A stretch of DNA of 64,000 bases from Octopus bimaculoides. Its lineage: Eukaryota. Location: contig NC_068984.1 of assembly GCF_001194135.2 (NCBI RefSeq), positions 84,518,023-84,582,022 of the forward strand. The letters run 5' to 3'. Positions 10,131-64,000 of this stretch are shown in pieces (within the stretch, counting starts at the first letter, position 1; each line of letters begins with the position of its first letter). The translations under genes were made by a program, and so were the position numbers. Below the pieces are notes generated by a model. It searched no databases and was not told where the DNA came from. It saw only the letters and a program-made list of their open reading frames with translations.

Positions 10131-11931
10131 ACCTTCTGAGCATTGAAAATAATTAATTTTACTTATGCTGTCTGCTAATTACTCCCATACATGTCACATA
10201 TATTGTATAGCAAGTCCTGTTTGACTTTTAGTACTTATTGAAAAGTACAAACATGCTGTTTAATACTGCTAATTTAGTGATCTATATAATTTCTTTTATA
10301 TCACTTCTCTCTATTTATTTGTAAGTTCTTGAATGCCTGATTTAATAAATTTATTGGGTTTTGAATTAGAATATATATTTATTTAATTTCTCATCTCTTC
10401 CCTGCTGGGCATACTTCCCACCCACTGTAATTGATTTTGTTAAGATCTAAATAAGTGGATGTCTGATAGAGCAAAATCTTGAAAATATGGAATGCATAGT
10501 GTTTTTTTTTCCCCATCTGAATGATTCCAGAGCATATTTAGTGACTTGTGTAGTATGTGGTCAAGCTTATGAAAGATTATGCGCAAAAGTTTTTTAAACC
10601 AAGATATTTCTATCCAAAACAGTTTCGAATAGTGGTGTTACTGACAGCAGACTTCAGAAGTGATTGCTTGGTTCTGCTCTAGAAGCTCATAATGAATAAT
10701 TTCTTTGTTATCCTACCAAACAGCCAAAAAAATTTTCTTTGGGTAAGTCTCCCTCATGGATGTGTTTATAGGTTTTCGATTTGGGCTCAGCTACTGTCTG
10801 AAGTGCTTAATACTGCTGCAAAGAATCCATTTCTTATTTCCATTCAGAATCTGGTTTAAAAATGGTACTTGACAGTTACATGTATGGAGTGATTCACTGC
10901 AATTAAGCTGCCACATGTATTCAGCTTCATTCTCATTGCATGTCATTATCGGCAAGTGTCTCCTCCTAACATGAAGCTCACCAAAGCTTTGTGAGTGGAT
11001 TTGGTAGACACAGATGTAAACAAGTCCACTTGTGTGTGTGTGTTTATCCAGTTGTTCTCCTCAGAGTTTATAGTTTTGCAAGCAAAATGGTGACCTCACT
11101 GGTGTGAGTGGCATGAAAAAACACACTCAGTACTCACTGTAAAGTGGTTGGTGTTAAAAAGGGTACCCAGCCATAGAAACCATGCTGAAGCAGACACGGA
11201 AGAATGATGTAGTCCTTGGACCCATTGGATCTTGTCAAAGGCCAGCAGGGAACATGGCTGTTAAATAATGATGGCACATGTTTGTGTGTGTGTTTGTTTG
11301 TATCTACACTTCACCAAAGATCAATAAGCTACAAGTGGTAGCATTGCTGTCATTTCCTGTGTTAGCACATCATCTGCTGGCTTTGTGCCTTCAAAGACTT
11401 GTGGAATAAAATATCCCTTACTTGCGAAGTAGGTTAGGGTTAATGACTTGAAGGGTGTCCAGCTGTAAAACAAAAATATAATATATTTGTCTAGCATGGA
11501 AAAATAAATGTAAAAACAAATATGTGTGTCTACACACACGCGCACACACACACATTCACACCCACACACACAGACATACACACACACACAGACATACACA
11601 CACACACAGACATACACACACACACAACTGATTTGTATTGTATCTCAACATATATTCTCTTGTCATACAAAGACTGCTAGCCATGGCTATATAAGGCTGA
11701 CAGCTTGGCATTTCACTCATGTAACCTCCAGCTTTTGAAGTGAGTAACCCAATTTGCACAACTGTTTTGTGTGAAATGCATTTTGCTTTTTCAAACTGCT
11801 TTCATTTCCACCTTATAGGCAATAATAATAGCTTTGAAGTTTCTTATTTCCTTTTAGCTATGGCATGAAACAGATATGTTCTGTTTAGCATGTGTATGTT
11901 CATACCCTTAAATATATAAATATATAAATAA

Positions 11932-20178: not shown

Positions 20179-21466
20179 AGGCAATAACAGAGGAATTCAA
20201 GACAAACTGCCCCTGGGAGCTCCTCTATGCTGATGACCTTGCACTAATAGCTGAGTCACTACCAGAACTGAAGATGAAGTTTCAGGTGTGGAAGCAAGGT
20301 TTAGAGTTGAAGGGCTTTAGAGTCAATCTAGCAAAAACCAAAGTTCAAGTAAGTAGGAAGGCAGACAAATCACAAACCCCTTCAGGTAGATGACCCTGCT
20401 TGATCTGTAAAAAAGGTGTAGGTAGAAACTCCATAAGATGTACCCAGTGTAAGCTGTGGACACACAAGAAGTGCAGCAATATCAAAGGAAGGTTAACTAG
20501 GAAGATAGTTTTTGTGCGTGGCAAATGCTCAGGGGCAATAAAGACCGAAAATGTACGGAAAATAGATTCCTTCACATGCCAGGGGGAGAAACTAGAAGTA
20601 GTTGATAGGTTCCGCTACCTAGGTGACCAAGTCTGTAGTGGAGGTGGATGCTCGAAGAGCGTAGCCACTAGAATAAGAATAGCTTGTGCAAAGTTTAGAA
20701 AGCTTCTACTTCTGCTGGTAACAAAGGGCCTCTTACTCAGAGTGAAAGGTAGACTGTATGATGCATGTGTGCGAACAGCCATACTACACAGCAGTGAAAC
20801 ATGGGCCGTGACTGCTGAGGACATGCGTAGACTTGAAAGAAATGAAGCTAGTATTATCTACTGGGTGTGTAATGTCAGTGTGCACACACAACAGAATGTA
20901 AGCACCCTGAGAGAAAAGTTGGACATAAGAAACATCAAATGTGGTGTGCAAGAGAGACAACTGCGCTGGTATGGTCATCTGATGCATATGGATAAGGACA
21001 GCTATGTGAAGAAGTATCAGACCCTAACAGTGGAAGCAATCTTTAGAAGAGGTTGACCCAGGAAGACATGGGATGGAGTGGTGAAGCTCAACCTTTGAAC
21101 ATTGGACCTCTCGAAGGCAATGACAAGAGACCAAGACCTTTGGAGATATGCTATGATTGAGAAGACCCGGCAAGGAAAGTGAGATTGCAGCTGTGAATGA
21201 TACCAGTGTCACATAACCAGCCCATTTAAAAGTATCCTTGAATCACTGGGTGACACACTGTGCTTGAGAAAACCTGTTGAGTTAAGTGAAATCATAGTCG
21301 TGGCCAATACCAGTGCCGCCTGACTGGCACCTGTGCTGGTGGCACGTAATAAGCACCATTCAAACGTTGATTGATGCCAGTGCTGCCTGACTGGCTTGCC
21401 TGTCCTCAGTCAAATTGTCCAACCCATGCCAGCATGGAAAATGGATGTTAAACGATGATGATGATG
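20179..21466 (+). mobile_element. 5'-truncated RTE-clade LINE (reverse transcriptase C-terminal half, 3' UTR, (GAT)n tail)
   Basis: LLYADDL at 20226-20237, NLAKTKV, a Cys/His finger (CLICKKGVGRNSIRCTQCKLWTHKKC), LEVVDRFRYLG, LHSSETW, LRWYGH. One stop; ends ...GGATGTTAAACGATGATGATGAT. Confidence 0.92.
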
Positions 21467-38461: not shown

Positions 38462-41400
38462 CGGGCTTCTTTCAGTTTCCGTCTACCAAATCCACTCACA
38501 AGGCTTTGGTCAGCCCGAGGCTATAGTAGAAGACACTTGCCCAAGGTGCCACGCAGTGGGACTGAACCCGGAACCATGTGGTTGGTAAGCAAGCTACTTA
38601 CCACACAGCCACTCCTGTGCCTATGTAAAAGAAAAAACAGTATTGTTTAGGGTGATCATAAGATCATGTGTTCAGTTCCTGAATCAATGAGCATATTGTG
38701 TTCTTGAGCTAGGTATTTCATTTCTTGTTGCTCCTATTTCAACTGTGAATACCACCATATATGAATACCACCCAAGCACCTCTTCCCTCAGCTATCATAT
38801 CCTGGTTGTTCTACTGCAGGGGTGGGGAAACTCCTGCCTGCAGGTGCAATTGTGCCCGCAAGCCTGTTTTATTTTGCCCATAGGCTGATATACTCATATG
38901 TACAAAATACAGTAAAGTTTACAATCAAAATTTATACAATATTCGTGTACCTATTTGTGACATAGGTTGCATTTCCACTAAGACTTAAAATCGTCAGAAA
39001 TCGTCCGGTAATTGCTATTTGAATGGAAATTTTGTTTTCACTTTAAAACACATATTGCTAGGTTTATACCATCCACTTGAGATCCAACTACACTTTAGCT
39101 GAAAAAAATAGAATGCCTCATAAGTAATATAAACGTCTTAAATTCAGTGGCGGCGTTAATGAAGATGTTACACGTTAATTTAATGTGTTAAACTTATCTA
39201 TATTAATGTATATCAAATTATACATAGATATATACAAGATTTACACAGATATAAGAATTAGAACCTGTGATCCGCCCGTGGACCTTTTTCTTAGGAAATT
39301 TTTGCCTGCTGCACCAAAAAGTTTCCCCACCCCTGTTCTACTGGGACAAGAGTGAGTGGGCTGAGATTACCTATGTACCTAAAACTATGAGTGAAAGCAT
39401 GATACATGTTGCTAAGCCATGCTCATTCACAGGTGACACTAGCTTGCACAATCTTAGGTATGTAAAATGATAGGTTGGTAATGACAAGAAGTGTTTGCTG
39501 AATCAGGGTTGACTTGTGATTAAATGACAATGATGACAATGACAACTGTAAAATGTTGAATAAAAAGAATCATTTGTTGCTATCTTTATGATAGTTAAAA
39601 TATTGTTATGCACAAATGCACACACCCACGCACACGATATATGATATATATATATATATATATATGATATATATTTTTTTCAGGTCCGCAGCACCCATGG
39701 TTAATCCAAGCATATGCAAAATCAGTAAAATATCCCTTTGCTTCAATCCTGGGGCAAGAAATCTTTCAAGGAGGATTTGTTCCTTCTGATACAGATTATC
39801 AAATTTTTCAAAAATTTGGAAACATTCCAGGTGAGTTTGTAATATGTTGCCTAATGACTGTGTAGATGTGTTTCTGTATGAGTGGAGGGGGATGAAAGAA
39901 AGATACAGTTAGACAGTGAGAGAAAGAGTGAGAGAGAAAGAGAGTGAGTGAGAGAGAGACTTAGGAAGAAAGTGAGAGACCTGCACAAACGAAAAGATTG
40001 AGAGGGATAGTAGGAGAGAATAAGATGTAAAGACAGACTGTGACAGAGAGAAAGAGGGAGCAAGAGAGAGAGAAGGAGCAAGAGAGAGAGAGAGAGAGAG
40101 AGAGAGAAATTAGGACAGCTGAGGTAAGGGAAGAAAGAGAAGGACAGAAATTGGGACAGAGTAAGAGGCATATAGTCATACATGCTGAATTTGTTCATGT
40201 ATTTATGTTTCTGTGGTTTGTAGATATGCTTTAAAATGAATTAGCAGCAAAACACAGTTATTATAACAATCAATCTTGTAAAGCTCCTAGTTATTTGTTA
40301 CCTTTGAAAATTATATTCTGTAAATAAGCAAGTAAAACTTCAGGTGTTACACGTCAGTTGAATCAACTGCTATTGTATAATAATAAAAGATATGGTACTC
40401 TGAAGTAGTTGCAGAAACCTGTTTCTTAAGTTCTGCTAAGTTTGAAGAAACAGATACTTCACTTAACTTTTGTATTTTTTGCTCTTTTCAACCTAGAGAG
40501 AGTATTTAACTATTTGAATGGTTTTTATTCTGAAATAGGAAACTAGGCTTAGCTTTGGGTGGTAGGCTGAACGCACTGACCTGTGTAACATCATCACCAC
40601 CGCCAGGTCTTCCAATGTCTCTTGTAGGGGCTCTCTCTGTTGTAAGCATTTGGACTGGAGCCCAGTTCTCTCCTTGTTTGTGTTTGTCCTCCAGACATTG
40701 ACCTGCTGATGTTCAAGCTGGGCGTTGACCACATTAATCTCAACAGTTTTGGAACAGAGCCTAAAGATCTTGTGTGTTGTCCCTTCTCCCTTGACTAACA
40801 TATAAAATGAAGTAATCTATTATTAGCAGAGAACTTCAAAGTGTACAGGTGTGTGTTGAACAGATATAAGGAGCCTCCACTATATCAACTCTACATTTCT
40901 GGTAAAGACGTGTGTTGTTGACTTTGTTTGGTAATGAGGATTAGATGTAAGAGTTTGTAATAGAAAGAAGTCAATTTTTCTGTTACTATATTCATCATTC
41001 TCAAAACACTGATAATGTAGAATAGTACAAATCTGAGAAGGCAGCGGGAGTCAAGAAATTCCATGACTTGTGAGTCTACATATTAATAACTGCACTGTTA
41101 ATGTTAGGTCATTTGAAAAGTAGCCAAAGATGGCCTAAAATAATTTTAAAACTCTTGTTTTAAAAAATATGTTTTGTATGATGAGCTTTTCATCATCATC
41201 ATCATTTAGCATCTGTTTTTCATGCTAGCATGGGTGAGACAGTTTGACTGGTAAGTCAGAGAGCTACACCAGGCTCCAGTCTATTTTGGCTTGGTGTCTA
41301 TGGCTGGATACCCTTCCTAATGCCAACAACTCCACAGTGTACTGGGTGCCTTTTATATGTCACCAGTATGGGTGCTTTTTATATGTCACTGACACGAGTG

Positions 41401-44005: not shown

Positions 44006-46161
44006 CACATTCTGTATCCCACTAGGTGCTGCACTAACCACTATTCCTAGTTCTTCTACTTTAGAACATAAGCCATCTGGAAGTTCTTTTTTGTGTATGT
44101 TTTTCCTTTAACTGCTGGTTTGTTACTGTTCAAAAAAAAGTATCAACTGTGTTGATCTCACTGGTCTTGAAGGGTCTGCAAAGGACATGTGCTCAGCCCC
44201 TTCCTCCTGACAAATTGTACCCCTCACATCTTCCCCAAAAATCTTGTAAAGAGATGAACTTGTAAAGTATTCAGGGAGGTGACTACACTGGGAGAAGCTT
44301 GTAATTGGAGTGGGTGGATAATGATGCTGGTTGAGAAATTACTGTTGGTGGAGGGCCACATAAGAAAGACAAAGATATGAAAACAAACTGGTGTGATTTG
44401 TTTTCATTTTACTGATCACACATAAAATAATGAAACCTATTCTGATATGATATATTGTAGATCTGTCCAATTTAGGCTGGTTTACATAAAAAAGACATTC
44501 AGGTGTTGATTATTGTTGCTTAAACTCCAGTCACTTGTGGTTGAGCTGACCTATGATGAAGGCATTCCAGCTGTGAACATCTAGTGTTTGATAATGGTAA
44601 TGATGATTGCCTTGTTATGAATTGTCATGATTAATAAACCATCCAATAGATTGTGTTTGATGGTTGAGAGTTTGACAAATGTTTCATTTTACTATAAAAA
44701 ACAATAGGTTCAATCATTCAGGAATAAGAAATCTAATAATTTGTGATTGAGCTGAGTGACCGGAAATGCAGTGTAGATGTAAATGATTCCTTTCATATCT
44801 TAAGTTGACATTAAGAGTTGAGAAAATTATAATCTTCAGCTTAATGTGTAATGTCATTTAATATTTAAAGATTAAGAATGGTAAATAAGCACTTATTAGG
44901 TTAAATTTGAGAGTATAGTGATTATATAGTATATGAATATATTTAATTTTTTTTAAAGACTTGTGACATTTTGGCTATTTAATCCTTGAAAGTAGGAAAC
45001 TTAGGGAAAAGTGTGTCATATAAATATGTTTAAAAAATTTTTTATTAACAACAAAAATGGTGAGTTGTTTCATCCCAGGCCAGCCTTGATCAATTAAGCC
45101 TTTGATCAAATTTATTCCAGCTGTAACTATCTTTGTTTTTCAGACATAGTGTATCTAGAACCAGCATTAGCCAATGTGCCTTTTTCTTTTTTTTTAAAGG
45201 TAGTAGAATGTGTTATAAAGGAGATTTGGCTGCTATTTTTGGCAAATGAAACAACCCTATATCTAACTGTTTCACTTGAAGAAATGTCATATTCTCCTTG
45301 TCTCCCCTTCTTATACACATCCCCATATTCTATCTAACAAATCTTCTACAAATGTGATATTTCATAAATTTATTTGTTTCACACTTTGCTTTCCTTTGTG
45401 TGTCTGTTTGAGAATAAATGATATTGCATTATATACATATTTACAACTTTTCTCTCAGGTTTGGACATAGCCTATGTTACCAATGGTTACGTTTACCATA
45501 CCAAGAATGACCGAACAGAATTCATTCAGCCTGGTTGCATACAGAGAGGTGGTGAGTGTGTATATATTTAATGACCCTCTCCAGATCCTCAATATGCCCA
45601 TCTATCTTTCTCTTTCATGTTCTTTTTTCTTTGTACCTTCTGTTCATACTTCCCCTTATAATGTGAGTTAGCTCTGGAATCCCCTAAGCAACCTTCCTTA
45701 TTAACCTTAGTACTCTTGTCTTTTCCTTTTTTTTTTACTAACACCTAATACAAATTCTTACCATATTCCTTGTTCTGTTCATCTCCCTTCCTCAATGGTG
45801 TCTACTTTGTTACTCTCTCCATTACCACATTCTCAAAACTATGAAGCTATTTCTCTCTTCAAACTTAATCTTCTCCTGTCGTTTCACCTGGAATCATTGC
45901 ACCTCTCTCTCTATTGTTTTCCTTCAGTCATAGGGGCTCCATTCAGGTCCTCTATTTTGCGACTTGCAAGGTGATCTCACTAGTACTGATTCTATGAAAA
46001 AAGCACAGTGTTTGGTGACAGGAAGAGAATCCAACTCTAGAAACAATGTCAAAGCAGCAATTGGAGGATGATACAGTCCTTCAGCTTGTCAGATCCTGTT
46101 GAACAATCCAACCCATGCCGATATGGAAAAGGGACATTAAATTATAATGAAGATGATGATG

Positions 46162-46206: not shown

Positions 46207-49022
46207 CAAGGAATATATATACATGTATACACACATATATGTACATACTTACATCTACATGTGTATATATATGCATATCAGGGTACAGGACGTTAGAACA
46301 ATAAACTACAGACAACGGAACGAACACATAGGAAAACGGAAAGCCACTTGGAATATCCCTTCATCAGCTGTCTCTATTCTATCTAGACGTATATATATAT
46401 ATATATANNNNNNNNNNNNNNNNNNNNNNNNNNNNNNNNNNNNNNNNNNNNNNNNNNNNNNNNNNNNNNNNNNNNNNNNNNNNNNNNNNNNNNNNNNNNN
46501 NNNNNNNNNNNNNNNNNNNNNNNNNNNNNNNNNNNNNNNNNNNNNNNNNNNNNNNNNNNNNNNNNNNNNNNNNNNNNNNNNNNNNNNNNNNNNNNNNNNN
46601 NNNNNNNNNNNNNNNNNNNNNNNNNNNNNNNNNNNNNNNNNNNNNNNNNNNNNNNNNNNNNNNNNNNNNNNNNNNNNNNNNNNNNNNNNNNNNNNNNNNN
46701 NNNNNNNNNNNNNNNNNNNNNNNNNNNNNNNNNNNNNNNNNNNNNNNNNNNNNNNNNNNNNNNNNNNNNNNNNNNNNNNNNNNNNNNNNNNNNNNNNNNN
46801 NNNNNNNNNNNNNNNNNNNNNNNNNNNNNNNNNNNNNNNNNNNNNNNNNNNNNNNNNNNNNNNNNNNNNNNNNNNNNNNNNNNNNNNNNNNNNNNNNNNN
46901 NNNNNNNNNNNNNNNNNNNNNNNNNNNNNNNNNNNNNNNNNNNNNNNNNNNNNNNNNNNNNNNNNNNNNNNNNNNNNNNNNNNNNNNNNNNNNNNNNNNN
47001 NNNNNNNNNNNNNNNNNNNNNNNNNNNNNNNNNNNNNNNNNNNNNNNNNNNNNNNNNNNNNNNNNNNNNNNNNNNNNNNNNNNNNNNNNNNNATTTAAAC
47101 ACATAAGAGAGATGTCCATAATAGGACATCTAACCCATTAGAAGGAGCAGTCAAACTCCAAACCACAATTAGGGATAATTTCGAAAGGGAATGAAAAATA
47201 ATATCATTTACCATCTATTATCTTTATTTTTTATTTTATTTTTCATTCCCTTTCGAAATTATCCCTAATTGTGGTTTGGAGTTTGACTGCTCCTTCTAAT
47301 GGGTTAGATGTCCTATTATGGACATCTCTCTTATGTGTTTAAATATACACTGTATGTATTTATATGAATAATATATAGTCTATTGACTAGTTTTTTTCTT
47401 CTCGCTAGACCACTGGTAGCAAATAGAATTTCTAAATTTTTTGCTACCCTGAGATTTATTAATATATATATCACCATCGTTCAATGTCCGCTTTCCATGC
47501 TAGCATGGGTTGGACGATTTGACTGAGGACTGGTGAACCAGATGGCTGCACCAGGCTCCAATTTGATCTGGCAGATTTTCTACAGCTGGATGCCCTTCCT
47601 AATGCCAGCCACTCTGAGAGTGTAGTGTGTGCATTTACATGCCACTGGCACAAGTACCAGTAAGGCGACGCTGGTAACGATCATGCTCAAATGGTGCTAT
47701 TTACGTGTCACTGGCACGGAAGCCAGACAGCTGTTCTGGCAATGATCACACTTGGACGGTGCTGTTAGTGTTCCACTGGCACAGGTGCCAGTCATCGAAT
47801 TTAGTTCAATTNNNNNNNNNNTTCTAAAGGTCCCAGTCACTAGTCATTGCCTCGGTGAGGCCTAAAGTTCGAAGGTCATGCTTCACCACCTCATCCCAGG
47901 TCTTCCTGGGTCTACCTCTTCCACAGGTTCCCCCAACCGCTAGGGTGTGGCACTTTTTCACACAGCTATCCTCATCCATTCTTGGACTTTGGTGATATGT
48001 TTCCAGCACTCCTTCTTGCTTTGTTGGGGTTGCCAATGTTCGTGGTCTTCTGAAACGCTTCTCGTGGACATTCTGAACAGTTCCATCAGCTTCAAACTCC
48101 TCTCTAATTTGAGTGATGGTAAGTTGCATTGGTGGATCTGTTTGAAACTCCCTCCTAAACTGTCTTTGCCCTTCAACTGCGTTTTCACACTTCCAGTAGC
48201 ATTTTAAGGTGAATTTTCTTTGTTCAAAGCTTATTCTGACTGCCATCATTAATTCCAATGGGTTTCATCTTGAAAGAAAAATCATCACTTGAGTTATCAG
48301 CTGCTAAAGTGTGTATACATTTTTTGGGGACACCCTGTATATATATATATATATATATATCCCTCTATCATACTTTAGCCTCAATACCTGGCATAAAGCC
48401 ACCTCACCTTCTACTACAACCCCACTCAGTTAAGAAGGTCTCCTTTTTCTTGTCTTACAAGTTTCTTGGCAACCTCGCTAACACGGGTGTTGCAAAAAAC
48501 ACACACACATATATTTTGATCCAGAATGTAGAGAACCAGAGATGGTTGGATACCTTTCCTAATGTGAGTCACTTTACAGACTGAACCGGATGCTTTTTTT
48601 TGCAACACCAGTATTAGCGATGTTGTCCAGTAACTTGCAAGACATGGAAAAGGAGCTCTTTGTAACTGAGTGGGATTGTAGTAGATGGGGAGGTGGCTTT
48701 GTGCCAGGTGTTGAGGCTAAAGTATGATAGAGGGATAGGCGTGAGTGACTTGCTATGGAATATAAATGTATATATTTATTGATCATTATATGTGCATGGT
48801 ATGTAGTTATGAGCTACTTCTGGTTTCATACATTAGAGACTCATAAAATGATATTTATGTACATAAAACAATATTTCAAATGATATTTACGTACATTAAA
48901 CAATATTTCAAATGTACATTATGTACATTAAATGATATTTATCTCTCACCAGTTGGAGTACTTTTTTTTCTTGATCTTACCTAAACAGGAAAGGAAACTA
49001 TAAATATATATATATATGTATG

Positions 49023-50152: not shown

Positions 50153-50185
<33 letters not shown>

Positions 50186-51493
50186 CATCATTTAATATCT
50201 GTTGTCCATACTTGCATGGGTTGGACGGTTTGACCAGAGCTCGTAAACTGGAAGGTTGCACCAGACTCCAGTCTCATTTGGCATGGTTTTCTATGGCTGG
50301 ATGCCTTTCCTAATGCCAACCACTCTGAGAGTGCATTGGGTGCTTTTACATACCACCAGCATGGGTGCCATTTGCGTGACACCAATATCTTCCACAACAA
50401 TGATTTTGCTCATCTTGATTGGTCTTCTTCTCAAGCATGACATAATGCCAAAGGTCTCAGTCATTGCCCCTGTGAGGCCCAGTGCTCAAAAGGAACTCAG
50501 CCACTTTGCCTCTGTGAGGCCCAACACTCGAAAGGTGCTCTTCATGTGCCACCGGCATGGGTACCAGTTACGTGACACCACCATTGGCCATTGTAAATAT
50601 ATCCAAATATTTCTTATTTATACACCTTATCTATCAATTAAATCATCATCATCATCATTTAATATCTACTTTTCCATGCTTGCATGGGTCAAATGGAGTT
50701 TATATGAGGCAGATTTCCTACAGCCGTATGTCCTTCCTGTTGCCAACCCTCATCTACTTTTAAGTCAATATTTTCCCATGGCCAGACGCATTCTTGCAGA
50801 AAACTGGAAATGAATGACACTGCTTATATGACAGTGACACTCATTTACAACTATCACATGATGTCAAGACAAGGAAACACAACCACACTCACTCACACAC
50901 ACACACACACATACATATTTGTATGTCTACAAAGTATCCTCAGTCTCCTGTGGAAGGACAAGGTGCCTCATACCAAAATCCTCCTGAGGACTGGGTTCTA
51001 CACAATTGAGGTCTCTATCCTTTATTGTCTTCTCTATTGAGTTGGACATGTCATTCGGATGCTGAGTAACCAGCTCCCAAAGTTGATCCTCTGCAGCAAG
51101 ATCAAGGCTGGAAATAGGTTGCACGGAGGTCCAAGACTTCGTTTCCATGACCATCTCGAACGGTTTCTTGTTTTATGTGGCATCCCTCCCACTCAGTCAG
51201 AGCCTGGCTGTTAATCAGAAGGCATGGAGGTCTGTATGTGATGCTGGCCTATAGTGCTTTGAAACTGGATGCTGGAGACTGCATGAAGAGACAAGGAGAT
51301 GTTGTCATCCCCACCCCCGTGTATGTTGTTCGGGGTCATTTTCAGTGCCCTCAGTGCCACAGGATCTGCCTGTCTCATCTCAGTCTTGTCAGCCACATTT
51401 GCTCCCATGAGAAACAATGTGCTGGATGCAGAAGAGGATGAATGTCTTGGATTAATGTTGTCATTAGTTACAATTGGCAAAGTGAAGTAAAAA

Positions 51494-51544
<51 letters not shown>

Positions 51545-51571
51545 ATGTGTATATATGTGCTTGTTTGTATG

Positions 51572-51607
<36 letters not shown>

Positions 51608-52343
51608 CTAAAATATTCTCACCATTTTTGTTGTTATTTTCAAGGTGAAAATTTGAAAGACCTGTTGGAAACAATAGCCTCCACACCAAAACTAGCTGAC
51701 CCAGGTGCTGATCGTCATGGCAACATGGTATTTTATGATGTGCTGGGTTTTTATATGTTTGCTTACCCTAAACGTATAGCAGCAATCCTGAACATTGTCA
51801 TTGTAGTGTGCAGTCTGTTACTTATTGCTAAACGTAATCTTCACTATGGCAACAGTTCTAAAGGTGAGTGTTTCTTCTTTCCAGAAATTTATTTTATTTC
51901 AAATTATTTTGTTGTTTTTGTTATTGTTATTATTACCTCCACCTTAGTAGAGACGTAGGTGTTGCTTTCAGTCGTTTGTTTGTTTGTTTGTTTGTCTGTG
52001 GACAAGATATCTCAAGAACTACTGGATGGATTCAGATGAAACTTTCAGGAATGTTTGGCCTTGTGACTGGCACAGTCCAATTAGATATTGAGATTAATCC
52101 GGTACCGGACAAGGATTCTGGATTATTTTTCCGATTTTTTTTACTTTACATGTATATACTCTTTTACTTGTTTCAGTCATTTGACTGTGGCCATGCTGGA
52201 GCACCGCCTTTTAGTCGAGCTAATTGATCCAGGACTTATTCTATCGGCCTCTTTTTGCCGAACCGCTAAGTTATGGGGACGTAAACACACCAGCATCGGT
52301 TGTCAAGCGATGTTGCGGGGACAAACACAGACACACAAACATA

Positions 52344-52388: not shown

Positions 52389-55300
52389 GACGGGCTTCTT
52401 TCAGTTTCCATCTACCAAATCCACTCACAAGGCTTTGGTCGGCCTGAGGCTATAGTAGAAGATTCTTGCCCAAGGTGCCACGCAGTGAGATTGAACCCGG
52501 AACTATGTGGTTGGTAAGCAAGCTGCTTACCACACAGCCACTCCTACGCCTATTTGTAAAGTTTCACATAGTTCTCTTGTACATGCACACACATACACAT
52601 ATATACTCACACATTTTCAGCATTGAACATTACCATCCCATTTCCATTGTATACACACACACAAACATACCTCTCTTTTACACACACATATACTCACACT
52701 TCAAACACCATTTACCGGCTTTTTCCCTCCTTCCCTCATTATTCATCTATCATTCCTTCCTTTCTCATTCATATGGCACTCTCTTTGCCACTTTGTTTTG
52801 TCTTTCTCATTATCATTACATTCTCTCACTCCCTCTCAGTCATGGCTATTACTCTCACTACTTCCCATTCACTGTATTAGTATTTCATCTCCTCTCTCTT
52901 CACCTCTCACTCAATATATATATATATATTTGGATTAATTTTGAGAGTGGTTGGGTTCATTTTCAGTTTTCTCATTTGTGAGAGCAGTCCAGTTTATTTC
53001 AGATATTCTCATTTTAAAAATCATCACTGTCTAATCATTGAGAAAACATTGGTGTTGCCTTGGCAGAGGTTTGCACTCTCTGAGTGCTCTTGTTATTATT
53101 ATTATTAGTATTATTTTGATTTGGTTCAGGTTTGGTCTTATTCCTGGTAGGATTTATGCGAGTAGCAGGTTACTACCTGTAACCTTAGATCTCCATAAGT
53201 TTTCAACAGTCTTTCAAGTGCTCAGAACCCTTATTATTGCTGTTGTTGTTGTTGTTGTTGTTAAGCTGGAAGAATTGTTAATGCACTGGACAAAATGCTT
53301 AGCAGGAATTTCTTCTGACTTTGTTCTGCTACTAGGGTCACCTTTGTCTTTCATCTGTTTGGGGTTGATAAAATAATTACCAGTTGAGTGCAAGTGCTTT
53401 TTCCCCCTTTGTGAAATTGCAGGCCTTGTGCCAACATTTGAATACGTTATGGCCAAATGTGTTATGCTGTCATATGGTTAGTTGAAAGAAGAAGTGAAAG
53501 TGACAGAAAAGGATCGAGGGAGAAGTGTTCATGACGTGGAGTAGGGGGAAGTAATTTTTATGTGGCTAAAGAGTTAGTTGAAGGGAGAGATACGGAGAAA
53601 GAGAGTTAGAAATACAATGTTTAGCAGAGGGGTGATGCTCTGGTGATGAGGTTAAAGAAATGCAGATAGAGAGGGAGAGGGCAGTTATATAAAGAGTGAG
53701 AGGTAGATAAAGTGAGAGAAGTGCTCGGATGGCTGTGTGGTTAAGAAACTTGCTTCCCAACTACTTGGTTCTAGGTTCAGTGTCTTTTAAAAGACACTTG
53801 GGCGAATGTCTTTTACTATAGCTCTCAGCAAATCAAAGTCTTGTGAGTTGAGTGTATTTAGTAGATGGAAACTGAAAGAAGGCCATTGTATATAAATGTA
53901 TGTGTGTGTGTAGTCATATATAAATATTTGTGTGTGTGTGTATGTGTGTGTGTCTGTCTGTATGTATGTATGTATGTAAGTGCGTGTTTGTGTGAGAGTT
54001 GGTGTTTCCTTGTCTTGTCATCAAATTGTTGTTGTAAATAAGCATCATCATCATACAAGCAGTGTCTTTCATATCCAAACTTCAGTGAAAACATGTCCAG
54101 CCATGGGGGAAGTATTACCTTTCCTGGAAACGGGTAGAGGTTGTAACAGGAAGGGCACCTGGCTGTAGAAAATCTGCCTCAACAAATTCCGTCTGAACCA
54201 TGCAAGCATAGAAAAGTAGATGCCAAAAGTGATGATGGTGACAATGAAATGTAACCCACTTTGTCATCACTTCAAACACTACATCCTTTCTTTTTTTTGC
54301 TTTTCTTTATTTTTACTTTTTTCTATTTTTACTTTTTTTTAGGTAAATCATCATGGAAGTCTTTGTTAAAGTTATTTGTGGCAGTTTTGGGACTATTTGT
54401 TATGTGGATCTCTATAGTGGCCACCATGCTGGCATCTGCTTTTGTGCTTGACAAATCTGAACATGCCATGTCTTGGTACAACCATTCCACCAACATCATC
54501 TGGGTGTTTGTTATTCCGGCTTTAATGGTGGCGCTGTTTGTATTGCTTTGTACAAAGCACTTTCTCTATAAAGTAAGCAAAGTTATTCTACTATATTCTT
54601 TTATGTAATTATTGATTTGTTTTATTTTATTTGCTTTGAGACGGCGACCTGTTCACTGACAAAATTCCGTGCTGCATCTCAAATGGCTTATAAACACCTT
54701 CCATGCTGCAATTGTTGATTTTATTTGTTTTTGTATATCTTTTGTATTGATGTGTCAATGTATCTTTACGTTAGTGTCCTCAAGGCTCTGCAGTAAGGAT
54801 AGCTCCATTAGATTTGCTGAATTTATAATTGAATTCCAGGTTATTGTTATTAAGGCTGCAGCTGGCAGAATCATCAGCATGCTGGGCAAAATTCTGAGTG
54901 GCATTTCGTCTGACTTTATGTTCTGAGTTCAGATGCCATCGGGTTCGACATTACCTTTCATCCTTTTGAGGGTTCATAAAATAAGTACCAGTTGAGCCCT
55001 GGCATTGATGTATTTGATTTCCCCCTCTCTGGAACTTGCTGGTCTTGTGCCAATATCTGAAACCAATAATATGATAATAATAGTGGTAGTGATTTCACTT
55101 AATGTTTAAAAGGAAGGTAGTGAGTTGGCAGAATTATTAGCACACCAGGCAAAATGCTTAGCATTGTCTGTCTCTATGTTCTGAGTTCAAGTTCTGCTGT
55201 AGTTGACTCTGTCATCCTTTTGAAGTCAATAAAATAAATACCAGTTGAGTACTGGTGTTGATGTAATCAACTTGGCCCTTGTCCTGAAATTACTAGCCTT

Positions 55301-57457
55301 ATGCCAAAATTTGAAATCATCATCATCGTCATCATCATTATTATTATTATTATTAAGGTGGCAAGCTAGCAGAATTGTTAGCATGCTGGACGAAATGCTT
55401 AGCGGTATTTCACCTGTCGCTATGTTCTGAATTCAAATTCCGCTGAGATCGACTTTGCCTTTCATCCTTTCAGGGGCAATAAATTAAATACCAGTGAAAC
55501 ACTGAGGTTGATGTAAGGCAATGAGTTAGTAGGATCATTTGCGTGTTGGAGAAAATGCTTGGCAGCATTTCTTTTAGCTCTTTACGTTTTGAGCTCAAAT
55601 CCTGCCAAGGTCAGCTTTGTCTGTCATCCCTTTGGAGATCAATAAAATAAAGTACCAGTCAAGTACTGGCGTTGATGTAATCAACTTCTCCTCAACATTA
55701 CTAGCTTTGTGTCCATAGAAAGAATTACTATCTTATCATTAATAAGTGGTTGGCGTTAGGAAGAACATCTAGCCATAGAAACCATGCCACAACAGACAGT
55801 TGGTATCTGGACAGTTCCCTGCTAGCCAGCTCCATGTCAAACCATCCAACCCATGCTAGCATGGAAAGCGGATGTTAAGCGATGATGATGATGATTATTA
55901 ATAGATGCAGGTACAGCTCTATGATTAAGAAGTATGCTTCCTGTTCACGTGGCTTTGCATTGCACCCTACAGTGTGACACCTTTGGAAAGCATCTTCTGC
56001 TATTTCTCCAGGCTGACTAAAGCCTTTATCATTGTCATCATCATCATCATATAATGTCTGTTTTCCTTGCTAGCATGGGTTGGATGGTTTAACCAGAGCT
56101 GACAAGCAGGAGAGCTGTACCAGGTTCCAGTCTGATTTGACTTGGTTTCTATTGTTGTATGCCCTTCCATTTTACAGTGTTCTGAGTGCTTTTTACATGG
56201 CACCTGCATGGTTGCTTTTACGTGGCACTGGTATGAGAGCTTTTTATGTAAATATAAATATACACAAAGGGTTTATATATATGTGTGTGTGTACCTCTTT
56301 GTTTTGACATTGTGTGATAGTTCTAAAAAGTGTCACCTCATACAAGTTGTGTCACTTGTTTCTGGTCTTTTCATTCTTGGAAACTGGTGAGAGTTGGTGA
56401 CACAGAGGACATTGAGCTGTAGGAAATCTGCCTCAGTGAATTCTGTCTGAACCAAAAAAACATGGAAAAGTGAACATGAAAATGATAATTATTTTATTGT
56501 TGTTATTCACAATAATAATGATTTTTAACATCTGCATGAGGCCACAAATATTTTTGGAAGCAACACAGTTGGTTAAACGGACCTCAGTACTCGACCGGTA
56601 CTCTATTTTATTGATACCCTGATTTCCTCTTAAGCATGATAGGTAAAGTTGACCATGGTGGAATTGGAAAACAACTTTGCCTTTCATCCTCTAAAATAAA
56701 CTATCAGCCTCAGTCAAATACTGGAGTCAATATGATCACACTGAGCTCATGTTCTGACCACGAGGACATATTACCTTGCTTGGAAATAGGTGAGAGTTAG
56801 TGATGGCAAAGGCATCTGGCCATAGAAAATCTCCATCAATAAATTTGTTCTGATCCATGCAAGCATGGAAAAGTGGACATTAAAATGATGATGATGATGA
56901 TGGTAATGACTTCCCTTCTGTTCTTTATGTTAAGACTTTCTGATTGGCACCAACAAATATATTTCACTTTCTCACTCTCTCTCTCTCTCTCCCCCAGAAT
57001 GAAAGCCTCTTCACCTTGGAACAGTTATACTATGATGCCAACGTTGTGATATGGTCCAGTCTATTGGCATTACTTACCTACTACAATGTTGGTTCAGCTT
57101 ATCTTCTCTCAGCTTGGTTGCTGTTCTCACTTCTCTTTAGACTGTTCAGACCCTACATCAAAGGTGAGTCACCCTAATTTCTTACCAAATTAATGCTTTA
57201 AACTTCTTCAATATTTCCCCATACATTTTGGAGCTAAAAACCATATATTAAAAACAGGCACTGTTACACTTTGATAAAGTCATATTGGCCGTTTATTGAA
57301 CACAGGCACTGTTTAATTTTCTTGTTTATTCTTTGATAATGTACCTATAACCTTTTCACTAATACTTCAATACCTCCTTGGTAAATTACTGAGTGGATGT
57401 GTTCAGTGATGGTGACCAGTACTATTGGTCCGAAGTTGTCAGGAGGTTGTCAAAGAA

Positions 57458-57491: not shown

Positions 57492-60400
57492 TCATTTTTA
57501 AATGTATGCATATGAGCAGTGGATGGCAAAATCAGTGGAATGGTGGGCAAAATCTTGTGTGGTATTTGATTTCATCTTCTTGTTTTAAGTTCAGATCCTA
57601 TCCAAGTTGTCTTTGCCTTTCATCCTTCTGAAGTTGAGAAAATAAGTACTTGTCTAATAGTACGAGGGTCCAGCAATTAAAAACTAGTAAAATTAAAAAT
57701 AAGAAGAATACGTAAATGAGGTTAAGTTGATAAACTACTGACTATACAATCATGAGATTAATGCCTGCTATAAACACTGTGAGGTATAGGCTAAGTACCT
57801 AAGTTCATTTCCTTAGTTCTGCCTTGCTGAAAAATTAATGTGACACCACATCACACCATGCCACACTGATACACTGTAACACACTATACCATATCCCATC
57901 ATATCACATTACACTATATCACTCTGAATCACACTTGACAATACCACACCACTTCCCACCACACTACGTACACTGCATTATATCACACCACATGCACCAT
58001 AAGTCATCAAAAGTATCCTCATCTAGCTTGAAATAATATTGAAATTTTCCTCATATCTCACATTACAGTATTGTAAAAAGGTGTAACATACATTGGATAA
58101 TATAATCCATGATAAACTGTTTGAAAAATAAATGGGGTACTCATGGCTGGTACACTTTTTTTTTTACATGTCTGCTTGATGAAGGCTGGCTTGGGAGCTA
58201 ACAATGCAACATAGATCACACCATACTACATTACTGTGGAACCTAACACTTGTGTGTTTTTGAATTCTGTATAATTGATTTGTAAATTAACCTTATTAAA
58301 GGACTGTTTTCACTATTTTTTCTATACTGTTTATTGTTAAGAGGAATAAAAGAATTTTCATTTTATTTCATGTGAGCATTTGAAAGTAATTTTTAATGAG
58401 AGAAAAAAAATCTTTGACAAAAGAAATATAATCAACATTGAAACAATGATAACCATAGTGTTTAATTTAACAAAACAGTGTTAATTAATCATGAAACATT
58501 AATTTATGGTGAAACATGCTTAATTAATAATGAAACATGTTTAATTATCAAGGAAACAAAATGATCATCAAAGAAACAGTGTTTTATTAACAACAAAATG
58601 TAAAGCTTATTAACAATGAACCATGTTTAATTAATGATGAAATATAACCTTTAATTAGCGATGAACATAATGTTTAATGAATAGTAAAACATTGATTTAT
58701 TAATGTTTTGCTATTAACATTAATTTTTGATGAAATATAATGTTTAATTTACAGTGACCCACATTGTTTGATGACAATGAAGCGTAACATCTGTAACGAC
58801 CGTGCGACCAGGAGAAGTGACAAGGAATTGCTCCTTTAGCACATCGCACGGTCGATACAAATAAAAATATGAAAAGAGGATAAATGAGTATAAGTGCCAA
58901 AAAGGAAAAGAGAGACACAACTGGTAGAAGGTCTAAGAAAAGGTTTTATTGATATGTCAACTTGTATGTCTGTGTGTGTGAGTGCGACATATAAACATAA
59001 TGATAGACAGGCCGTCATGTAAACAAAGTGTATGTGTATACAAACATGTATGTATGTGTGTGCGAGAAATATAGAGCATAGAAAAGAGTCTATAAGGACG
59101 TTGAGAAAAAGTCCAAACACAAGGATGGTAAATACCAGTGGTTGAGGTGTTGTAACAAGAAGTTGTGGTGGCAATGCAGAGCCGAGGAGAGATACTGTCA
59201 CACAAGAAGTTGAGGCTTCAATGCTGCGGCCGGTTATTTGGTACAGGAGTCCTCGCAGGTTGTATTCGCTGTTAACCATGGTGAAGCATTTCACAAACAG
59301 CGTGGAGAATAGCTGTGCGAGTGTTGCTGGTTGGTGTGTACATAGAGAAGTTAGTGTAGATGCTAAGAAGCTGGAGGCGATGTAGATGGAGGTTGCTGTT
59401 GTCATCGCTGGAACTGGCTGTGTGCTCTGTGGTCAGCAGCTAGACCTCAGAAGGTCTGGAGCCGAGAAGGCTGACAAAACTGTGACGGTGAAAAGCTAGC
59501 TATTTATAATATCCTATCGGCTCAAACTGGGGTTCAGAAAACTGTCTCACGCAACATTATCTGAAGGCTGCAATTGGTTGGGTTGCATCTTGGCGCACAA
59601 TAGAACAGGAGACAAAATGCACCAATACCATCCAATCAGAGTGGTGGACACAACAGGGTCCAAAAGTGCGGCCGAAGGCTAGCTGTTATCCACTACGTCT
59701 GCATCCATGTATATATATAACAGAGAGAGAGAGAGAGAGAAAAGTACGCTACACATCTAATTAATGAGGAAACATAAATAATAACAAAATGTAATGTTTA
59801 ATTAAGGAGAAAACATAATAATGCCAATAAAAAAGTATAGCTACACCATGTAATTATAATAGTAATGGTATGTGACCCTTATGAGTTTTTGTGGGAGCAA
59901 TGAGAACTAGAGTACAATTTAGATGTATCTTGAGTATCTCCAGAATGTCTGTTTGACGGTACTTAATCCTTCTCAAGATGTATATTCTCACATTAGGAGT
60001 TTGACTGAGCACTTGCAAGTTAATGAAACAGGTGTTAATTTCATGCAATTTCTGTTGCTCACAAGGTTGATCTGCACCATACCATGATATCTATTTATAT
60101 GAGAGTTTAATAGAAAATTGGATATGTTGAATTGTTGTGTGAAGTGTAGAGTCTAATTATTTTGGCCTGTGTTCTTCATTTCCGTGAAGAACAAAGAAAA
60201 ATGTTGGTGTGTTACTTGAGTTGTAGGATCTATGATTGGACTCACCAAATCTGTCCTAATGTATGATTCAGAAAGCCAGTGAGTGGTGAAAGAAAACATG
60301 ATCAATGCTTTCCACCATAGGTATCTGAAGAAAATTTCCTGCAGTTTCCAACAAATATCAAATGAAAACTGGTTGCAATATTGTGGTCCTTGAAATAGAA

Positions 60401-62441: not shown

Positions 62442-62454
62442 AAAAGTGTGAGAT

Positions 62455-63076: not shown

Positions 63077-63130
63077 CATTCTAAACAGGCACTGTCCTCT
63101 AGCCTTAGAGGACAGTACCTGTTTAGAATG
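63077..63130. other. 24-bp stem hairpin followed by AATAAA
   Basis: CATTCTAAACAGGCACTGTCCTCT, 6-nt loop, AGAGGACAGTACCTGTTTAGAATG (one mismatch); AATAAA 5 nt downstream. Confidence 0.8.
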
Positions 63131-63153
63131 ACCCTAATAAACTTCATACAGTT

Positions 63154-63967
63154 CACAAACATCGGCAACCCCCACAAAGCAAGAAGGAGTGCTGGAAACG
63201 TATCACCAAAGTCCAAGAATGGATGAGGATAGCTGTGTCAAAAAGTGCCACACCCTAGCGGTTGAGGGAACCTGTGGAAGAGGTAGACCCAGGAAGACCT
63301 GGGATGAGGTGGTGAAGCACGACCTTCGAACATTAGGCCTCACCGAGGCAATGACTAGTGACCAAGACCTTTGGAAATATGCTGTGTGTGAGAAGACCCA
63401 GCTAGGCAAGTGAGACCATAATCCAAGGCCTCTGCCAGAGGTGTAGCCAGCCCACTTATGCGTACCTTTCCTTCATTGGACACTAAACTCGGCTTGCGNN
63501 NNNNNNNNTGCGTACCTTTCCTTCATTGGACACTAAACTCGGCTTGCGAAGACCTGTTGGGGCAAGTGAAAGCGAAATCGTGATGGTACCTGTACCAGTA
63601 GAGCACTAAGAGCACCGTCTGAGTGTGATCATTGCCAGAGCAGCTATTTGGCTTCCGTGCCAATGGCACGTGAAGAGAGATTTGAGTGAGGTCGTTGCCA
63701 GTGCCGCTGGACTGGCTCCTGTACAGGTGGCACGTAAAATACACCATTTTGAGCGTGGCTGTTGCCAGTATCGTCTGACTGGCCTTTGTGCCGGTGGCAC
63801 GTAAAAGCATTCACTACACTCTCGGAGTGGAAGGGCATCCAGCTGTAGAAACTCTGCCAAATCATACTGGAGCATGGTGTAGCCATCTGGTTCACCAGTC
63901 CTCAGTCAAATCGTCCAACCCATGCTAGCATAGAAAGCGGACGTTAAACGATGATGATGATGATGAT
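63154..63967 (+). mobile_element. Second, 5'-truncated copy of the Tc1/mariner-RTE chimera
   Basis: Same junction CCAAGA/ATGGATGAG at 63218/63219, complete RTE C-terminus (...LWKYAVCEKTQLGK*), 3' UTR and (GAT)n tail. Confidence 0.9.
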
Positions 63968-64000
63968 GTATATATATGTGTATATATATATATATATATA

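What the first reader, a model, noticed from the sequence alone, without database searches (positions are those of the whole stretch)
47470..48337. Hybrid DNA-transposon/LINE element, present twice with an identical in-frame junction
Seen: the minus-strand element begins with a TA-CAGGGTGTCCC terminus and encodes a Tc1/mariner-type HTH N-terminus ([12 protein letters not shown]...SPR). It then switches in frame to the last ~50 codons, 3' UTR and (GAT)n tail of the RTE LINE, whose unfused version is at 20988 onward. The same junction (CCAAGA/ATGGATGAG) recurs at 63218/63219 on the opposite strand, and the two copies differ by about a dozen substitutions over ~220 bp by manual alignment. Copy 2 is truncated within the transposon part but has an intact 3' tail, as expected for target-primed reverse transcription. 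Inference: a non-autonomous retroposon that borrows a transposase promoter and 5' end and is mobilised by RTE machinery. It may make a ~150-aa HTH fusion peptide that could bind or repress cognate TIRs. I do not know whether it has been described.
Basis: partly seen in the sequence, partly recalled or inferred. Interest (0 to 1): 0.78.

Follow-up and report, generated by a model that had tools for sequence, protein, structure and literature searches.

The report
Transposon–LINE chimera, present twice
A piece of a mariner-type DNA transposon really is fused in frame to the tail end of a LINE retrotransposon at two places 15 kb apart, but it looks like an ordinary insertion accident that was copied once, not a demonstrated new family of mobile elements.

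Summary
An identical 30-mer spans the junction at 47965-47994 (-) and 63204-63233 (+), with none expected by chance. The 5' module is the left inverted repeat, 5'UTR and first 89 codons (DUF4817 HTH) of a ~1.27-kb Tc1/mariner-type transposon. The 3' module is the last 64 codons, hairpin-repeat 3'UTR and (GAT)n tail of an abundant LINE.

New points:
- The breakpoint lies inside a 4-5-nt microhomology (AAGAA) shared by both parents.
- Copy 1 keeps the transposon's terminal repeat to its first base and sits in a (TA)n tract, as three unfused relatives do. Its 5' end therefore looks transposase-made, not reverse-transcribed.
- The gap at 47812-47821 hides about 150 bp of collinear LINE sequence. 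The ORF stops (TAG) 2 nt before it.

Best reading: a 5'-truncated LINE insertion joined into a resident transposon, deleting its 3' ~900 bp (copy 1), and the junction was then copied once (copy 2). I found no third copy, no fused protein in the databases and no sign of coding constraint. Interest is modest.

The parts
48338..48360 (.). (TA)n tract immediately 5' of copy 1
   Evidence: Read directly. Unfused relatives of the transposon also sit in (TA)n (L001, L005).
48304..48337 (-). Left terminal inverted repeat of the parental Tc1/mariner-type transposon (CAGGGTGTCCCCAAAAAATGTATACACAC...)
   Evidence: Matches both ends of the O. vulgaris element L001 (9910.. and 11179..11146, 94%) and of L003. 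It is the only such terminus in the window.
47981..48337 (-). Transposon-derived module of copy 1: TIR, 5'UTR, codons 1-89 (first HTH)
   Evidence: 83.5% identical to L001 and 87% to L003. Pfam DUF4817, E=6.5e-14.
47824..48258 (-). Fused ORF of copy 1 (144 aa from TTG; first ATG at 48249), ending at TAG two bases before the gap
   Evidence: Copy 2 and the LINE have TGG where copy 1 has TAG.
47979..47983 (-). AAGAA microhomology that contains the breakpoint (copy 1)
   Evidence: Transposon parents read ccAAGAAaatc. LINE parents read gcgAGAAtgg or gtAAGAAtgg.
47470..47980 (-). LINE-derived module of copy 1 (ORF end, 3'UTR hairpin units A and B, degenerate tail GATGGTGAT at 47470-47478)
   Evidence: 94.9% identical to copy 2 over 158 bp, 90.7% to L002. 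Repeat units.
47812..47821 (.). Assembly gap inside copy 1; about 150 bp of LINE sequence missing or unread
   Evidence: The flanking blocks are collinear with L002 10106-10266 and 10427-10572.
47461..47469 (.). (TA)n remnant immediately 3' of copy 1's tail
   Evidence: Read directly.
63077..63130 (+). 25-bp inverted duplication (4-nt loop) at the 5' boundary of copy 2
   Evidence: arms 63077-63101 and 63106-63130, 96% complementary. The right arm overlaps the weak start of transposon homology.
63150..63218 (+). Transposon-derived remnant of copy 2 (codons ~67-89); weak homology may reach back to 63118
   Evidence: Local alignments to copy 1, L001 and L003; 6 differences in 69 bp from copy 1.
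63219..63968 (+). LINE-derived module of copy 2: 64 codons to the stop at 63411-63413, 3'UTR units A, C, D, and (GAT)6 tail at 63950-63968
63459..63548 (.). Gap 63499-63508 flanked by an exact 40-bp duplicate (unmerged contig ends)
   Evidence: Read directly. The O. vulgaris LINE L002 has this 40-mer region once.
63969..64000 (.). (TA)n-like tract 3' of copy 2, running to the end of the window
   Evidence: What follows it is outside the window.
20196..21465 (+). Unfused, 5'-truncated, decayed copy of a related LINE (YADD RT motif, PHD-like finger, C-terminal ...LRWYGHLMHMDKDS..., (GAT)n tail)
   Evidence: It is 81% identical to copy 2 over 20988-21184. Relatives carry RVT_1 + PHD.

Best explanation
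The feature is a chimeric junction made by a LINE insertion into or next to a resident DNA transposon, and it was later copied once.

Step 1 (inferred from anatomy). A ~1.27-kb Tc1/mariner-type transposon integrated into a (TA)n microsatellite, as its unfused relatives do.

Step 2 (inferred). The LINE's reverse transcriptase was primed in the (TA)n tract just 3' of that transposon and copied the last ~750 nt of a LINE RNA. The 5'-truncated cDNA was joined inside the transposon at a 4-5-nt microhomology (AAGAA). This removed the transposon's 3' ~900 bp, including its right inverted repeat. Copy 1 (48337-47470) is that locus or its direct descendant. The in-frame reading is a one-in-three accident.

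Step 3 (inferred, less certain). Copy 2 (about 63150-63968) descends from the same junction. I lean to LINE-machinery retrotransposition of a junction-spanning transcript, a kind of 5' transduction. Copy 2 is 5'-truncated, in the opposite orientation, has different 5' flanks, and carries a longer perfect (GAT)6 tail.

Nothing shows further amplification, use of the transposase promoter, or a working HTH peptide.
For: - Shared junction by descent: an identical 30-mer occurs twice, with 0 expected.
- Parents identified. Unfused transposase reads ...HQSPR|KSVRQ (P0001, P0002). Unfused LINE reads ...GHVAR|MDEDSCVKK (P0005).
- Microhomology AAGAA/AGAA is present in both parents at the breakpoint.
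- Copy 1 starts at base 1 of the terminal repeat, flanked by (TA)11.5. Three unfused relatives also sit in (TA)n (L001; L003; L005).
- The LINE tail of copy 1 abuts the remaining (TA)n.
- The rest of the transposon and a second terminal repeat are absent from the whole window.
- Copy 2 is truncated at the 5' side with an inverted 25-bp repair-type duplication, has a full 3' end with (GAT)6, and shares no 5' flank with copy 1.
- At least 13 other short fragments with the same kind of tail in 64 kb show that this LINE machinery copies 3'-end-bearing RNAs very often.
- From established knowledge: microhomology at 5' junctions of truncated LINE insertions and insertion-associated target deletions are known for human L1. 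I did not open the papers listed (PMC2912911, PMC1920257), so they are pointers only.
Against: - The two copies lie only 15 kb apart. That is very unlikely for a random retrocopy unless the family has thousands of members, and no other close relative is in the window or in 62 kb of O. vulgaris DNA.
- Both tails are followed by (TA)n, whereas only 1 of 13 other LINE tails is. This would come for free if copy 2 were a DNA-level copy that includes flank.
- No target-site duplication is visible for copy 2.
- An insertion with a ~900-bp target deletion ending exactly at the microsatellite is a rare class of event.
- No transcript evidence could be obtained.
Confidence: 0.45

Rival explanations
1. 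Local DNA-level copying. Copy 2 arose without an RNA step. One route is a small inverted duplication that includes the (TA)n flank. Another is one-ended repair or gene conversion, in which a break at a pre-existing nearby LINE fragment was repaired from copy 1, synthesis ran across the junction ~70-100 bp into the transposon part, and the end was joined with a snap-back.
For: - The copies are 15 kb apart and inverted.
- (TA)n follows both tails.
- A 25-bp inverted duplication sits at copy 2's 5' boundary, as expected at end-joining junctions.
- Identity is somewhat higher around the junction (5.1% divergence in 158 bp; 2.8% without the four gap-adjacent differences) than in the 3'UTR end (8.7%) and unit A (about 15%).
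- The two copies carry different 3'UTR unit sets (A,B versus A,C,D) and different tails. This fits an independent LINE fragment that was partly converted.
Against: - Homology ends at the LINE tail as far as can be seen.
- 5' truncation, a fresh perfect tail and opposite orientation are the classic retrocopy picture.
- The heterogeneity in divergence is only marginal (my own Fisher estimate from the, 52 counts, not run as a tool call: p about 0.01-0.25 depending on what is counted).
- Small dispersed inverted duplications are rare.
- There is no 5' flank homology.
Confidence: 0.3
2. This is an amplifying non-autonomous retroposon family whose full-length members, copy 1 included, are retrocopies. 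They would be transcribed from the transposase promoter and mobilised by the LINE, perhaps making an HTH fusion peptide.
For: - Two copies in one 64-kb window is what a family of 10^4 or more copies would give.
- The 3' end needed for recognition by the LINE is present in both.
- Octopus genomes hold hundreds of unclassified SINE families (PMC13282606).
- The fusion is in frame, giving an ORF of 141-144 aa.
Against: - Copy 1 includes the terminal repeat to its first base and (TA)n on both sides. This fits DNA integration, not a promoter-initiated RNA.
- A high-copy family should leave many shorter truncated relatives, yet none at >=85% identity over >100 bp is in the window. None was found in 62 kb of O. 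vulgaris.
- No protein spans both halves among 5.8 billion clusters or 1.84 billion representatives.
- The ORF shows no constraint and has a stop in copy 1.
- The peptide lacks the second HTH of the paired DNA-binding domain.
Confidence: 0.15
3. Template-switch origin. During reverse transcription of a LINE RNA the enzyme jumped at AAGAA onto a transposase mRNA, giving a chimeric retrocopy of the U6-L1 or MINE type. Both copies would descend from it.
For: - There is microhomology at the switch point.
- Chimeric retrocopies of this kind are documented in fungi and mammals (PMC2104539 abstract).
- A 5S rRNA directly fused to a tRNA-type SINE 550 bp away suggests such chimeras can form in this genome.
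Against: A jump onto an mRNA should end at the mRNA's 5' end. It should not end at the outermost base of the terminal inverted repeat with the (TA)n context typical of transposase-made insertions.
Confidence: 0.08
4. Assembly artefact. The junction in one or both copies is a mis-join of short-read contigs in repeats.
For: - The assembly is gap-rich (8 gaps in 64 kb).
- Both copies contain a gap.
- Copy 2's gap is flanked by an unmerged 40-bp duplicate.
Against: - In both copies the junction lies in uninterrupted sequence, about 160 and 280 bp from the gaps.
- The two copies differ by about 5-9% and have different flanks, so they were assembled from different reads.
Confidence: 0.03

Closest known systems
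5'-truncated LINE insertions with microhomology-mediated 5' joining and target-site deletion (human L1; I did not open the papers PMC2912911 and PMC1920257, so they are pointers only)
   Same: A truncated LINE 3' end with its tail is joined to pre-existing DNA at a few bases of microhomology. Target DNA is lost (here the transposon's 3' ~900 bp). No clear target-site duplication.
   Different: The LINE here has a (GAT)n microsatellite tail rather than poly(A). The target was another mobile element sitting in a (TA)n tract. The junction then reappears at a second site.
5' transduction and composite LINE-dependent retroposons (e.g. human SVA, PMC3287187)
   Same: A non-LINE 5' module is carried along with a 3' end that the LINE machinery recognises. 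Daughter copies are 5'-truncated with constant 3' ends.
   Different: SVA is a proven family with thousands of copies and target-site duplications. Here only two copies are known, with no such duplications and no transcript evidence.
Chimeric retrocopies made by reverse-transcriptase template switching (U6-L1 chimeras; MINE and tripartite chimeras of Magnaporthe, PMC2104539)
   Same: Two unrelated transcripts are fused head to tail, with the LINE 3' end at the 3' side and short microhomology at the joint.
   Different: The 5' partner here begins at the DNA transposon's outermost terminal-repeat base in its usual (TA)n target. That points to DNA rather than mRNA as the 5' partner.
Composite Tx1 elements of Xenopus (LINE Tx1L inside DNA transposon Tx1D; from my own knowledge, not checked here)
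   Same: A LINE and a DNA transposon are found fused with the same junction in more than one copy.
   Different: In Tx1 the recurring junction is the LINE's site-specific 3' target. Here the recurring junction is at a 5' truncation point, which independent insertions would not reproduce.
Truncated transposase repressors (KP protein of the P element; dominant-negative mariner transposase fragments; from my own knowledge)
   Same: An N-terminal DNA-binding fragment of a transposase is encoded by a defective copy.
   Different: There is no evidence here of expression, conservation or activity. Only the first of the two HTH motifs is retained.

Membership tests
Tc1/mariner DNA transposon (5' module and its parent) | DDE/D transposase homologous to Tc1/mariner enzymes | tested here: met
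   The parental protein read through from L003 hits the Sleeping Beauty catalytic domain (5.6e-11) and full-length Mos1 (4.2e-6) in the PDB. Pfam's DDE models did not hit. The hybrid itself keeps only codons 1-89.
Tc1/mariner DNA transposon (5' module and its parent) | Two terminal inverted repeats flanked by TA | tested here: not met
   The parents L001 and L003 have both repeats in TA/(TA)n. The hybrid copies have one (copy 1) or none (copy 2), and no second terminus exists in the window. The hybrid is therefore not a mobilisable DNA transposon.
Non-LTR retrotransposon (LINE), RTE clade (3' module) | Reverse transcriptase of LINE type in the unfused element | tested here: met
   Window 20196-21185 translates to a YADD-containing RT fragment. 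Its relatives carry Pfam RVT_1 plus a PHD finger.
Non-LTR retrotransposon (LINE), RTE clade (3' module) | Placement in the RTE clade by RT phylogeny; single ORF with an N-terminal AP endonuclease | not tested
   Only 5'-truncated copies were available and no reference set was at hand. The following are consistent but not diagnostic: the microsatellite tail (Petrosino et al., PMC9115989) and the expansion of RTE-BovB in cephalopods (PMC10294476).
LINE-dependent non-autonomous retroposon family (SINE/SVA-like) | 3' end shared with the partner LINE | tested here: met
   The 3'UTR and (GAT)n tail match LINE copies in the window and in O. vulgaris.
LINE-dependent non-autonomous retroposon family (SINE/SVA-like) | Many dispersed copies with unrelated flanks | tested here: inconclusive
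   There are two copies, 15 kb apart. The 5' flanks are unrelated. The 3' flank of copy 2 lies outside the window. There was no third copy in 62 kb of O. vulgaris. Searches of the prokaryotic, viral and metagenome collections found nothing, as expected. A genome-wide count was not possible.
LINE-dependent non-autonomous retroposon family (SINE/SVA-like) | Own transcription (promoter) giving junction-spanning RNA | not testable with these tools
LINE-dependent non-autonomous retroposon family (SINE/SVA-like) | Target-site duplications at each copy | tested here: inconclusive
   Copy 1 is flanked by (TA)n on both sides. That could be a duplication or simply the split microsatellite. Copy 2 has (TA)n only on its 3' side, and only 32 bp of that flank are visible.
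Segmental or local DNA duplication | Homology continuing into the flanks | tested here: inconclusive
   The 5' side shows none. On the 3' side both copies continue as (TA)n and the window then ends.

The most novel reading that the evidence does not exclude
The junction marks a truly amplifying hybrid retroposon with hundreds or more copies. Its 5' module, taken from a mariner-type transposon, would supply the promoter and a short HTH peptide able to interfere with the parental transposon. The LINE would supply mobility through the shared 3' end.
Probability: 0.08. Interest if true: 0.65.

Novelty: new member of a known kind. Interest (0 to 1): 0.27.

Why it matters
If the junction is just an insertion accident copied once, it is one more example of how LINE insertions remodel other mobile elements in a very repeat-rich genome. 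It also gives a small worked case of microhomology joining in a LINE with a microsatellite tail.

It would matter more if a genome-wide count showed many copies. A DNA-transposon 5' end recruited as the head of a LINE-dependent retroposon would then be a new source of non-autonomous elements in cephalopods. Such elements make up over a tenth of the octopus genome and are mostly unclassified (PMC13282606).

Tried and rejected
No read depth, junction counts, RNA evidence or gap closure were possible.
- Fused protein in databases: no hit covered more than 58% of the fusion. No representative matched both halves. Octopus mobile-element ORFs are sparse in these collections, so this is weak evidence.
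- Exact-protein look-ups to extend the window or find the same loci elsewhere: the 189-aa ORF at 58836-59405, copy 2's 74-aa and 64-aa ORFs, and copy 1's 141-aa ORF were all not on record.
- Orthologous locus through host-gene exons: two ERMP1-like ORFs gave no hit at 1e-10. Pfam gave only a sub-threshold ERMP1-TM match. The empty-site test was therefore not possible.
- The junction 22-mer was absent from the metagenome, prokaryote-genome and viral collections. These hold essentially no octopus DNA, so this is uninformative.
- Simple nested insertion is rejected. The remainder of the transposon is nowhere in the window.
- DNA-type mobility of the hybrid is rejected. There is no second terminal repeat.
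- Independent recurrence of the same junction is rejected as implausible for a 5' truncation point.
- Splicing origin is rejected. There is no GT donor at the transposon side (read).
- Mosaic origin from the 3'UTR: the apparent 23% divergence in the mid-3'UTR came mostly from aligning paralogous hairpin units (c1 has A,B; c2 has A,C,D). It is not good evidence by itself.
- The published O. vulgaris repeat annotation holds no sequence library as text. Repbase and Dfam could not be queried.
Full report
**What is in the sequence**

On the minus strand, copy 1 starts at 48337 with CAGGGTGTCCCC, directly after a 23-nt (TA)n run (48338-48360). It runs to a degenerate tail GATGGTGAT at 47478-47470, which is followed by TATATATATT. 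On the plus strand, copy 2 ends in (GAT)6 at 63950-63968. A (TA)n-like tract follows and reaches the end of the window.

A 30-mer across the junction occurs exactly twice in the window (47965-47994 minus; 63204-63233 plus), against none in 100 shuffles. BLAST aligns 48080-47822 with 63119-63376 at 90.4%. The 158 bp on the LINE side of the junction align at 94.9%.

**The assembly gaps**

The stretch before the gap at 47812-47821 (47982-47822) aligns with an O. vulgaris LINE copy at L002 10106-10266. The stretch after it (47802-47657) aligns with L002 10427-10572, on the same strand and in the same order. The two sides are therefore collinear. About 150 bp of LINE sequence (the last 13 codons and the start of the 3'UTR) are unread or deleted.

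The fused ORF (47824-48258, 144 aa from a TTG; first ATG at 48249) ends at a TAG two bases before the gap. Reading frame across the gap is therefore not an issue. Copy 2 and the LINE have TGG at that codon. Four of the eight differences in this stretch lie within 16 nt of the contig end, so that stop may be an assembly error.

Copy 2's own gap (63499-63508) is flanked by an exact 40-bp duplicate. The O. vulgaris LINE has this region once. This is an unmerged contig overlap.

**The two parents**

The first 89 codons hit Pfam DUF4817 (HTH) at 6.5e-14. Database relatives from Octopus vulgaris, O. bimaculoides and unnamed assemblies continue past the breakpoint as ...HQSPR|KSVRQASRE....

- An O. 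vulgaris locus (L001 9911-11178) and a 1,235-bp Logan contig (L003) show the parent. It is an element of about 1.27 kb with ~34-bp terminal inverted repeats that match copy 1's start.
- Its transposase, read through from L003, matches the Sleeping Beauty catalytic domain (5.6e-11) and full-length Mos1 (4.2e-6) among solved structures. 'Tc1/mariner-type' is therefore supported, although Pfam's DDE models did not hit.
- All three unfused copies I could see sit in or next to (TA)n (L001; L003; L005).

The 3' module equals the last 64 codons (MDEDSCVKK...QLGK*), the 3'UTR and the (GAT)n tail of a LINE.

- Unfused copies read ...LRWYGHVAR|MDEDSCVKK (P0005; L002).
- A decayed, 5'-truncated relative lies at 20196-21465 in the window, 81% identical from 20988.
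- Relatives carry RVT_1 followed by a PHD finger.
- I did not test the RTE assignment by phylogeny. It is consistent with the microsatellite tail (PMC9115989) and with the expansion of RTE-BovB in cephalopods (PMC10294476).

**The junction**

The transposon parents read ccAAGAAaatc. The LINE parents read gcgAGAAtgg or gtAAGAAtgg. Both hybrids read ccAAGAAtgg. The breakpoint therefore lies within a 4-5-nt microhomology and cannot be placed to the base. Such microhomology is the usual mark of end joining of a truncated LINE cDNA to DNA, or of a template switch. The fusion being in frame has a one-in-three chance.

**How copy 1 most likely arose**

- Copy 1 keeps the terminal repeat to its outermost base and has (TA)n on both sides, like transposase-made insertions of the parent.
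- An RNA made from the transposase promoter would start inside the element. A template jump onto an mRNA would also end inside the element.
- The rest of the transposon and a second terminal repeat are nowhere in the window. This is therefore neither a simple nested insertion nor a mobilisable DNA element.

The most economical reading is that a resident transposon in a (TA)n tract was hit by a LINE insertion primed in the (TA)n just 3' of it. The truncated cDNA was joined at AAGAA inside the transposon, and the intervening ~900 bp were lost. This is inference from anatomy. An orthologous locus with the intact transposon would prove it.

**How copy 2 arose**

Copy 2 carries 70-100 bp of the transposon part, so it must descend from the same fusion.

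For retrotransposition:
- It is 5'-truncated.
- It is in the opposite orientation.
- It has an unrelated 5' flank.
- It has a complete 3' end with a longer, perfect tail.
- The same LINE machinery has left at least 13 other short tail-bearing fragments in this 64-kb window.

For a DNA-level copy:
- The copies are only 15 kb apart, which a random retrocopy would almost never achieve unless the family is very large.
- The window holds no other close relative of the pair, and 62 kb of O. vulgaris DNA holds none.
- Both tails are followed by (TA)n, against 1 of 13 other LINE tails.
- Copy 2's 5' boundary carries a 25-bp inverted duplication (63077-63101 / 63106-63130), of the kind made by snap-back synthesis at repaired breaks. 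This would also fit the 5' resolution of a LINE insertion.

Divergence is 5.1% in the LINE ORF part, 8.7% in the transposon remnant, 8.7% in the last 150 bp, and about 15% in the one orthologous 3'UTR unit. The apparent 23% in the mid-3'UTR is mostly an alignment of paralogous hairpin units (copy 1 has units A,B; copy 2 has A,C,D). The heterogeneity is marginal and does not decide the matter.

The deciding sequence lies beyond position 64000. I put retrotransposition slightly ahead of local DNA copying and say plainly that the data do not separate them.

**The peptide idea**

The fused ORF exists in copy 1 only. It keeps the first HTH but not the second motif of the paired DNA-binding domain, which begins right after the breakpoint. 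Over the 75 shared codons the two copies differ by 5 synonymous and 7 non-synonymous codon changes, including a stop. No protein spanning both halves is present in either large protein collection. Octopus mobile-element ORFs are so thinly represented there that this counts for little. Nothing supports a function.

**What could not be done**

No read depth, junction counts, transcripts or gap closure were possible.
- No octopus genome could be searched by DNA. The junction was, as expected, absent from the metagenome, prokaryote and viral collections.
- Exact-protein look-ups of four window ORFs found nothing.
- An attempt to reach the orthologous locus through ERMP1-like exons failed.
- Repbase and Dfam were not available, and the recent O. 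vulgaris repeat paper does not mention chimeric or composite elements.

**Verdict**

This is a real, inherited chimeric junction of a known kind: a LINE 3' end joined to another mobile element, then copied. It is not catalogued as far as I could check, and it is not shown to be a family. Interest is modest unless a genome-wide count shows many copies.

Noticed in passing
window 62454-62572 (-), continuing to about 62110: A full-length 5S rRNA match (Rfam RF00001, 75 bits) is followed directly on the same strand by a tRNA-like SINE head (ggctcagtggttagg...gtttgattccc) and a body ending in (TA)n. It looks like a 5S + tRNA-SINE chimera, about 550 bp from hybrid copy 2.
   Followed up: partly
window 48358-48499 / 48596-48737: A large inverted repeat (142-nt arms, 87% complementary, 96-nt spacer) lies directly 5' of copy 1's (TA)n tract. 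Its arms resemble LINE/SINE 3'UTR sequence near 17951-18057.
   Followed up: partly
window 47093-47204 / 47233-47344: A near-perfect palindrome (112-nt arms, 99% complementary, 28-nt spacer) abuts the 685-N gap at 46408-47092, 126 bp from copy 1's tail. It is either a very young fold-back or an assembly artefact.
   Followed up: no
window 63459-63548: The gap 63499-63508 is flanked by an exact 40-bp duplicate (unmerged contig ends). The true sequence probably has it once, as in O. vulgaris L002.
   Followed up: yes
window 47600-47800, 63570-63800; L002 4030-6300 and 10380-10640: The LINE 3'UTR is built of ~65-bp units, each with a GTGCCnGTGGCAC hairpin followed by GTAAA. Copies differ in which units they keep (A,B versus A,C,D).
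   Followed up: partly
window 8671-8873, 14366-14512, 17821-18018, 22355-22490, 41190-41363, 46021-46161, 50166-50361, 50642-50689, 55836-55906, 56035-56208, 56855-56902: At least a dozen old (70-78% alike) 50-280-bp fragments end in the same LINE-type 3' end and (GAT)n tail. That is roughly one per 5 kb.
   Followed up: partly
window 51497-51958 (+) and 54261-54608 (+): Possible exons of an ERMP1-like membrane peptidase gene. Pfam ERMP1-TM gives E=4e-4, below threshold, and no homologue appeared at 1e-10. If real, both hybrid copies are intronic or close to this gene.
   Followed up: partly
window 554-898 (-): A fragment of a different, classic mariner transposase (Pfam Transposase_1, 1.8e-10).
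   Followed up: no
L001 9860-11200; L005 1-45; L003 ends: The parental ~1.27-kb mariner-type element is found in or beside (TA)n microsatellites in all three unfused copies seen. This suggests a preference for TA repeats beyond the TA dinucleotide.
   Followed up: partly
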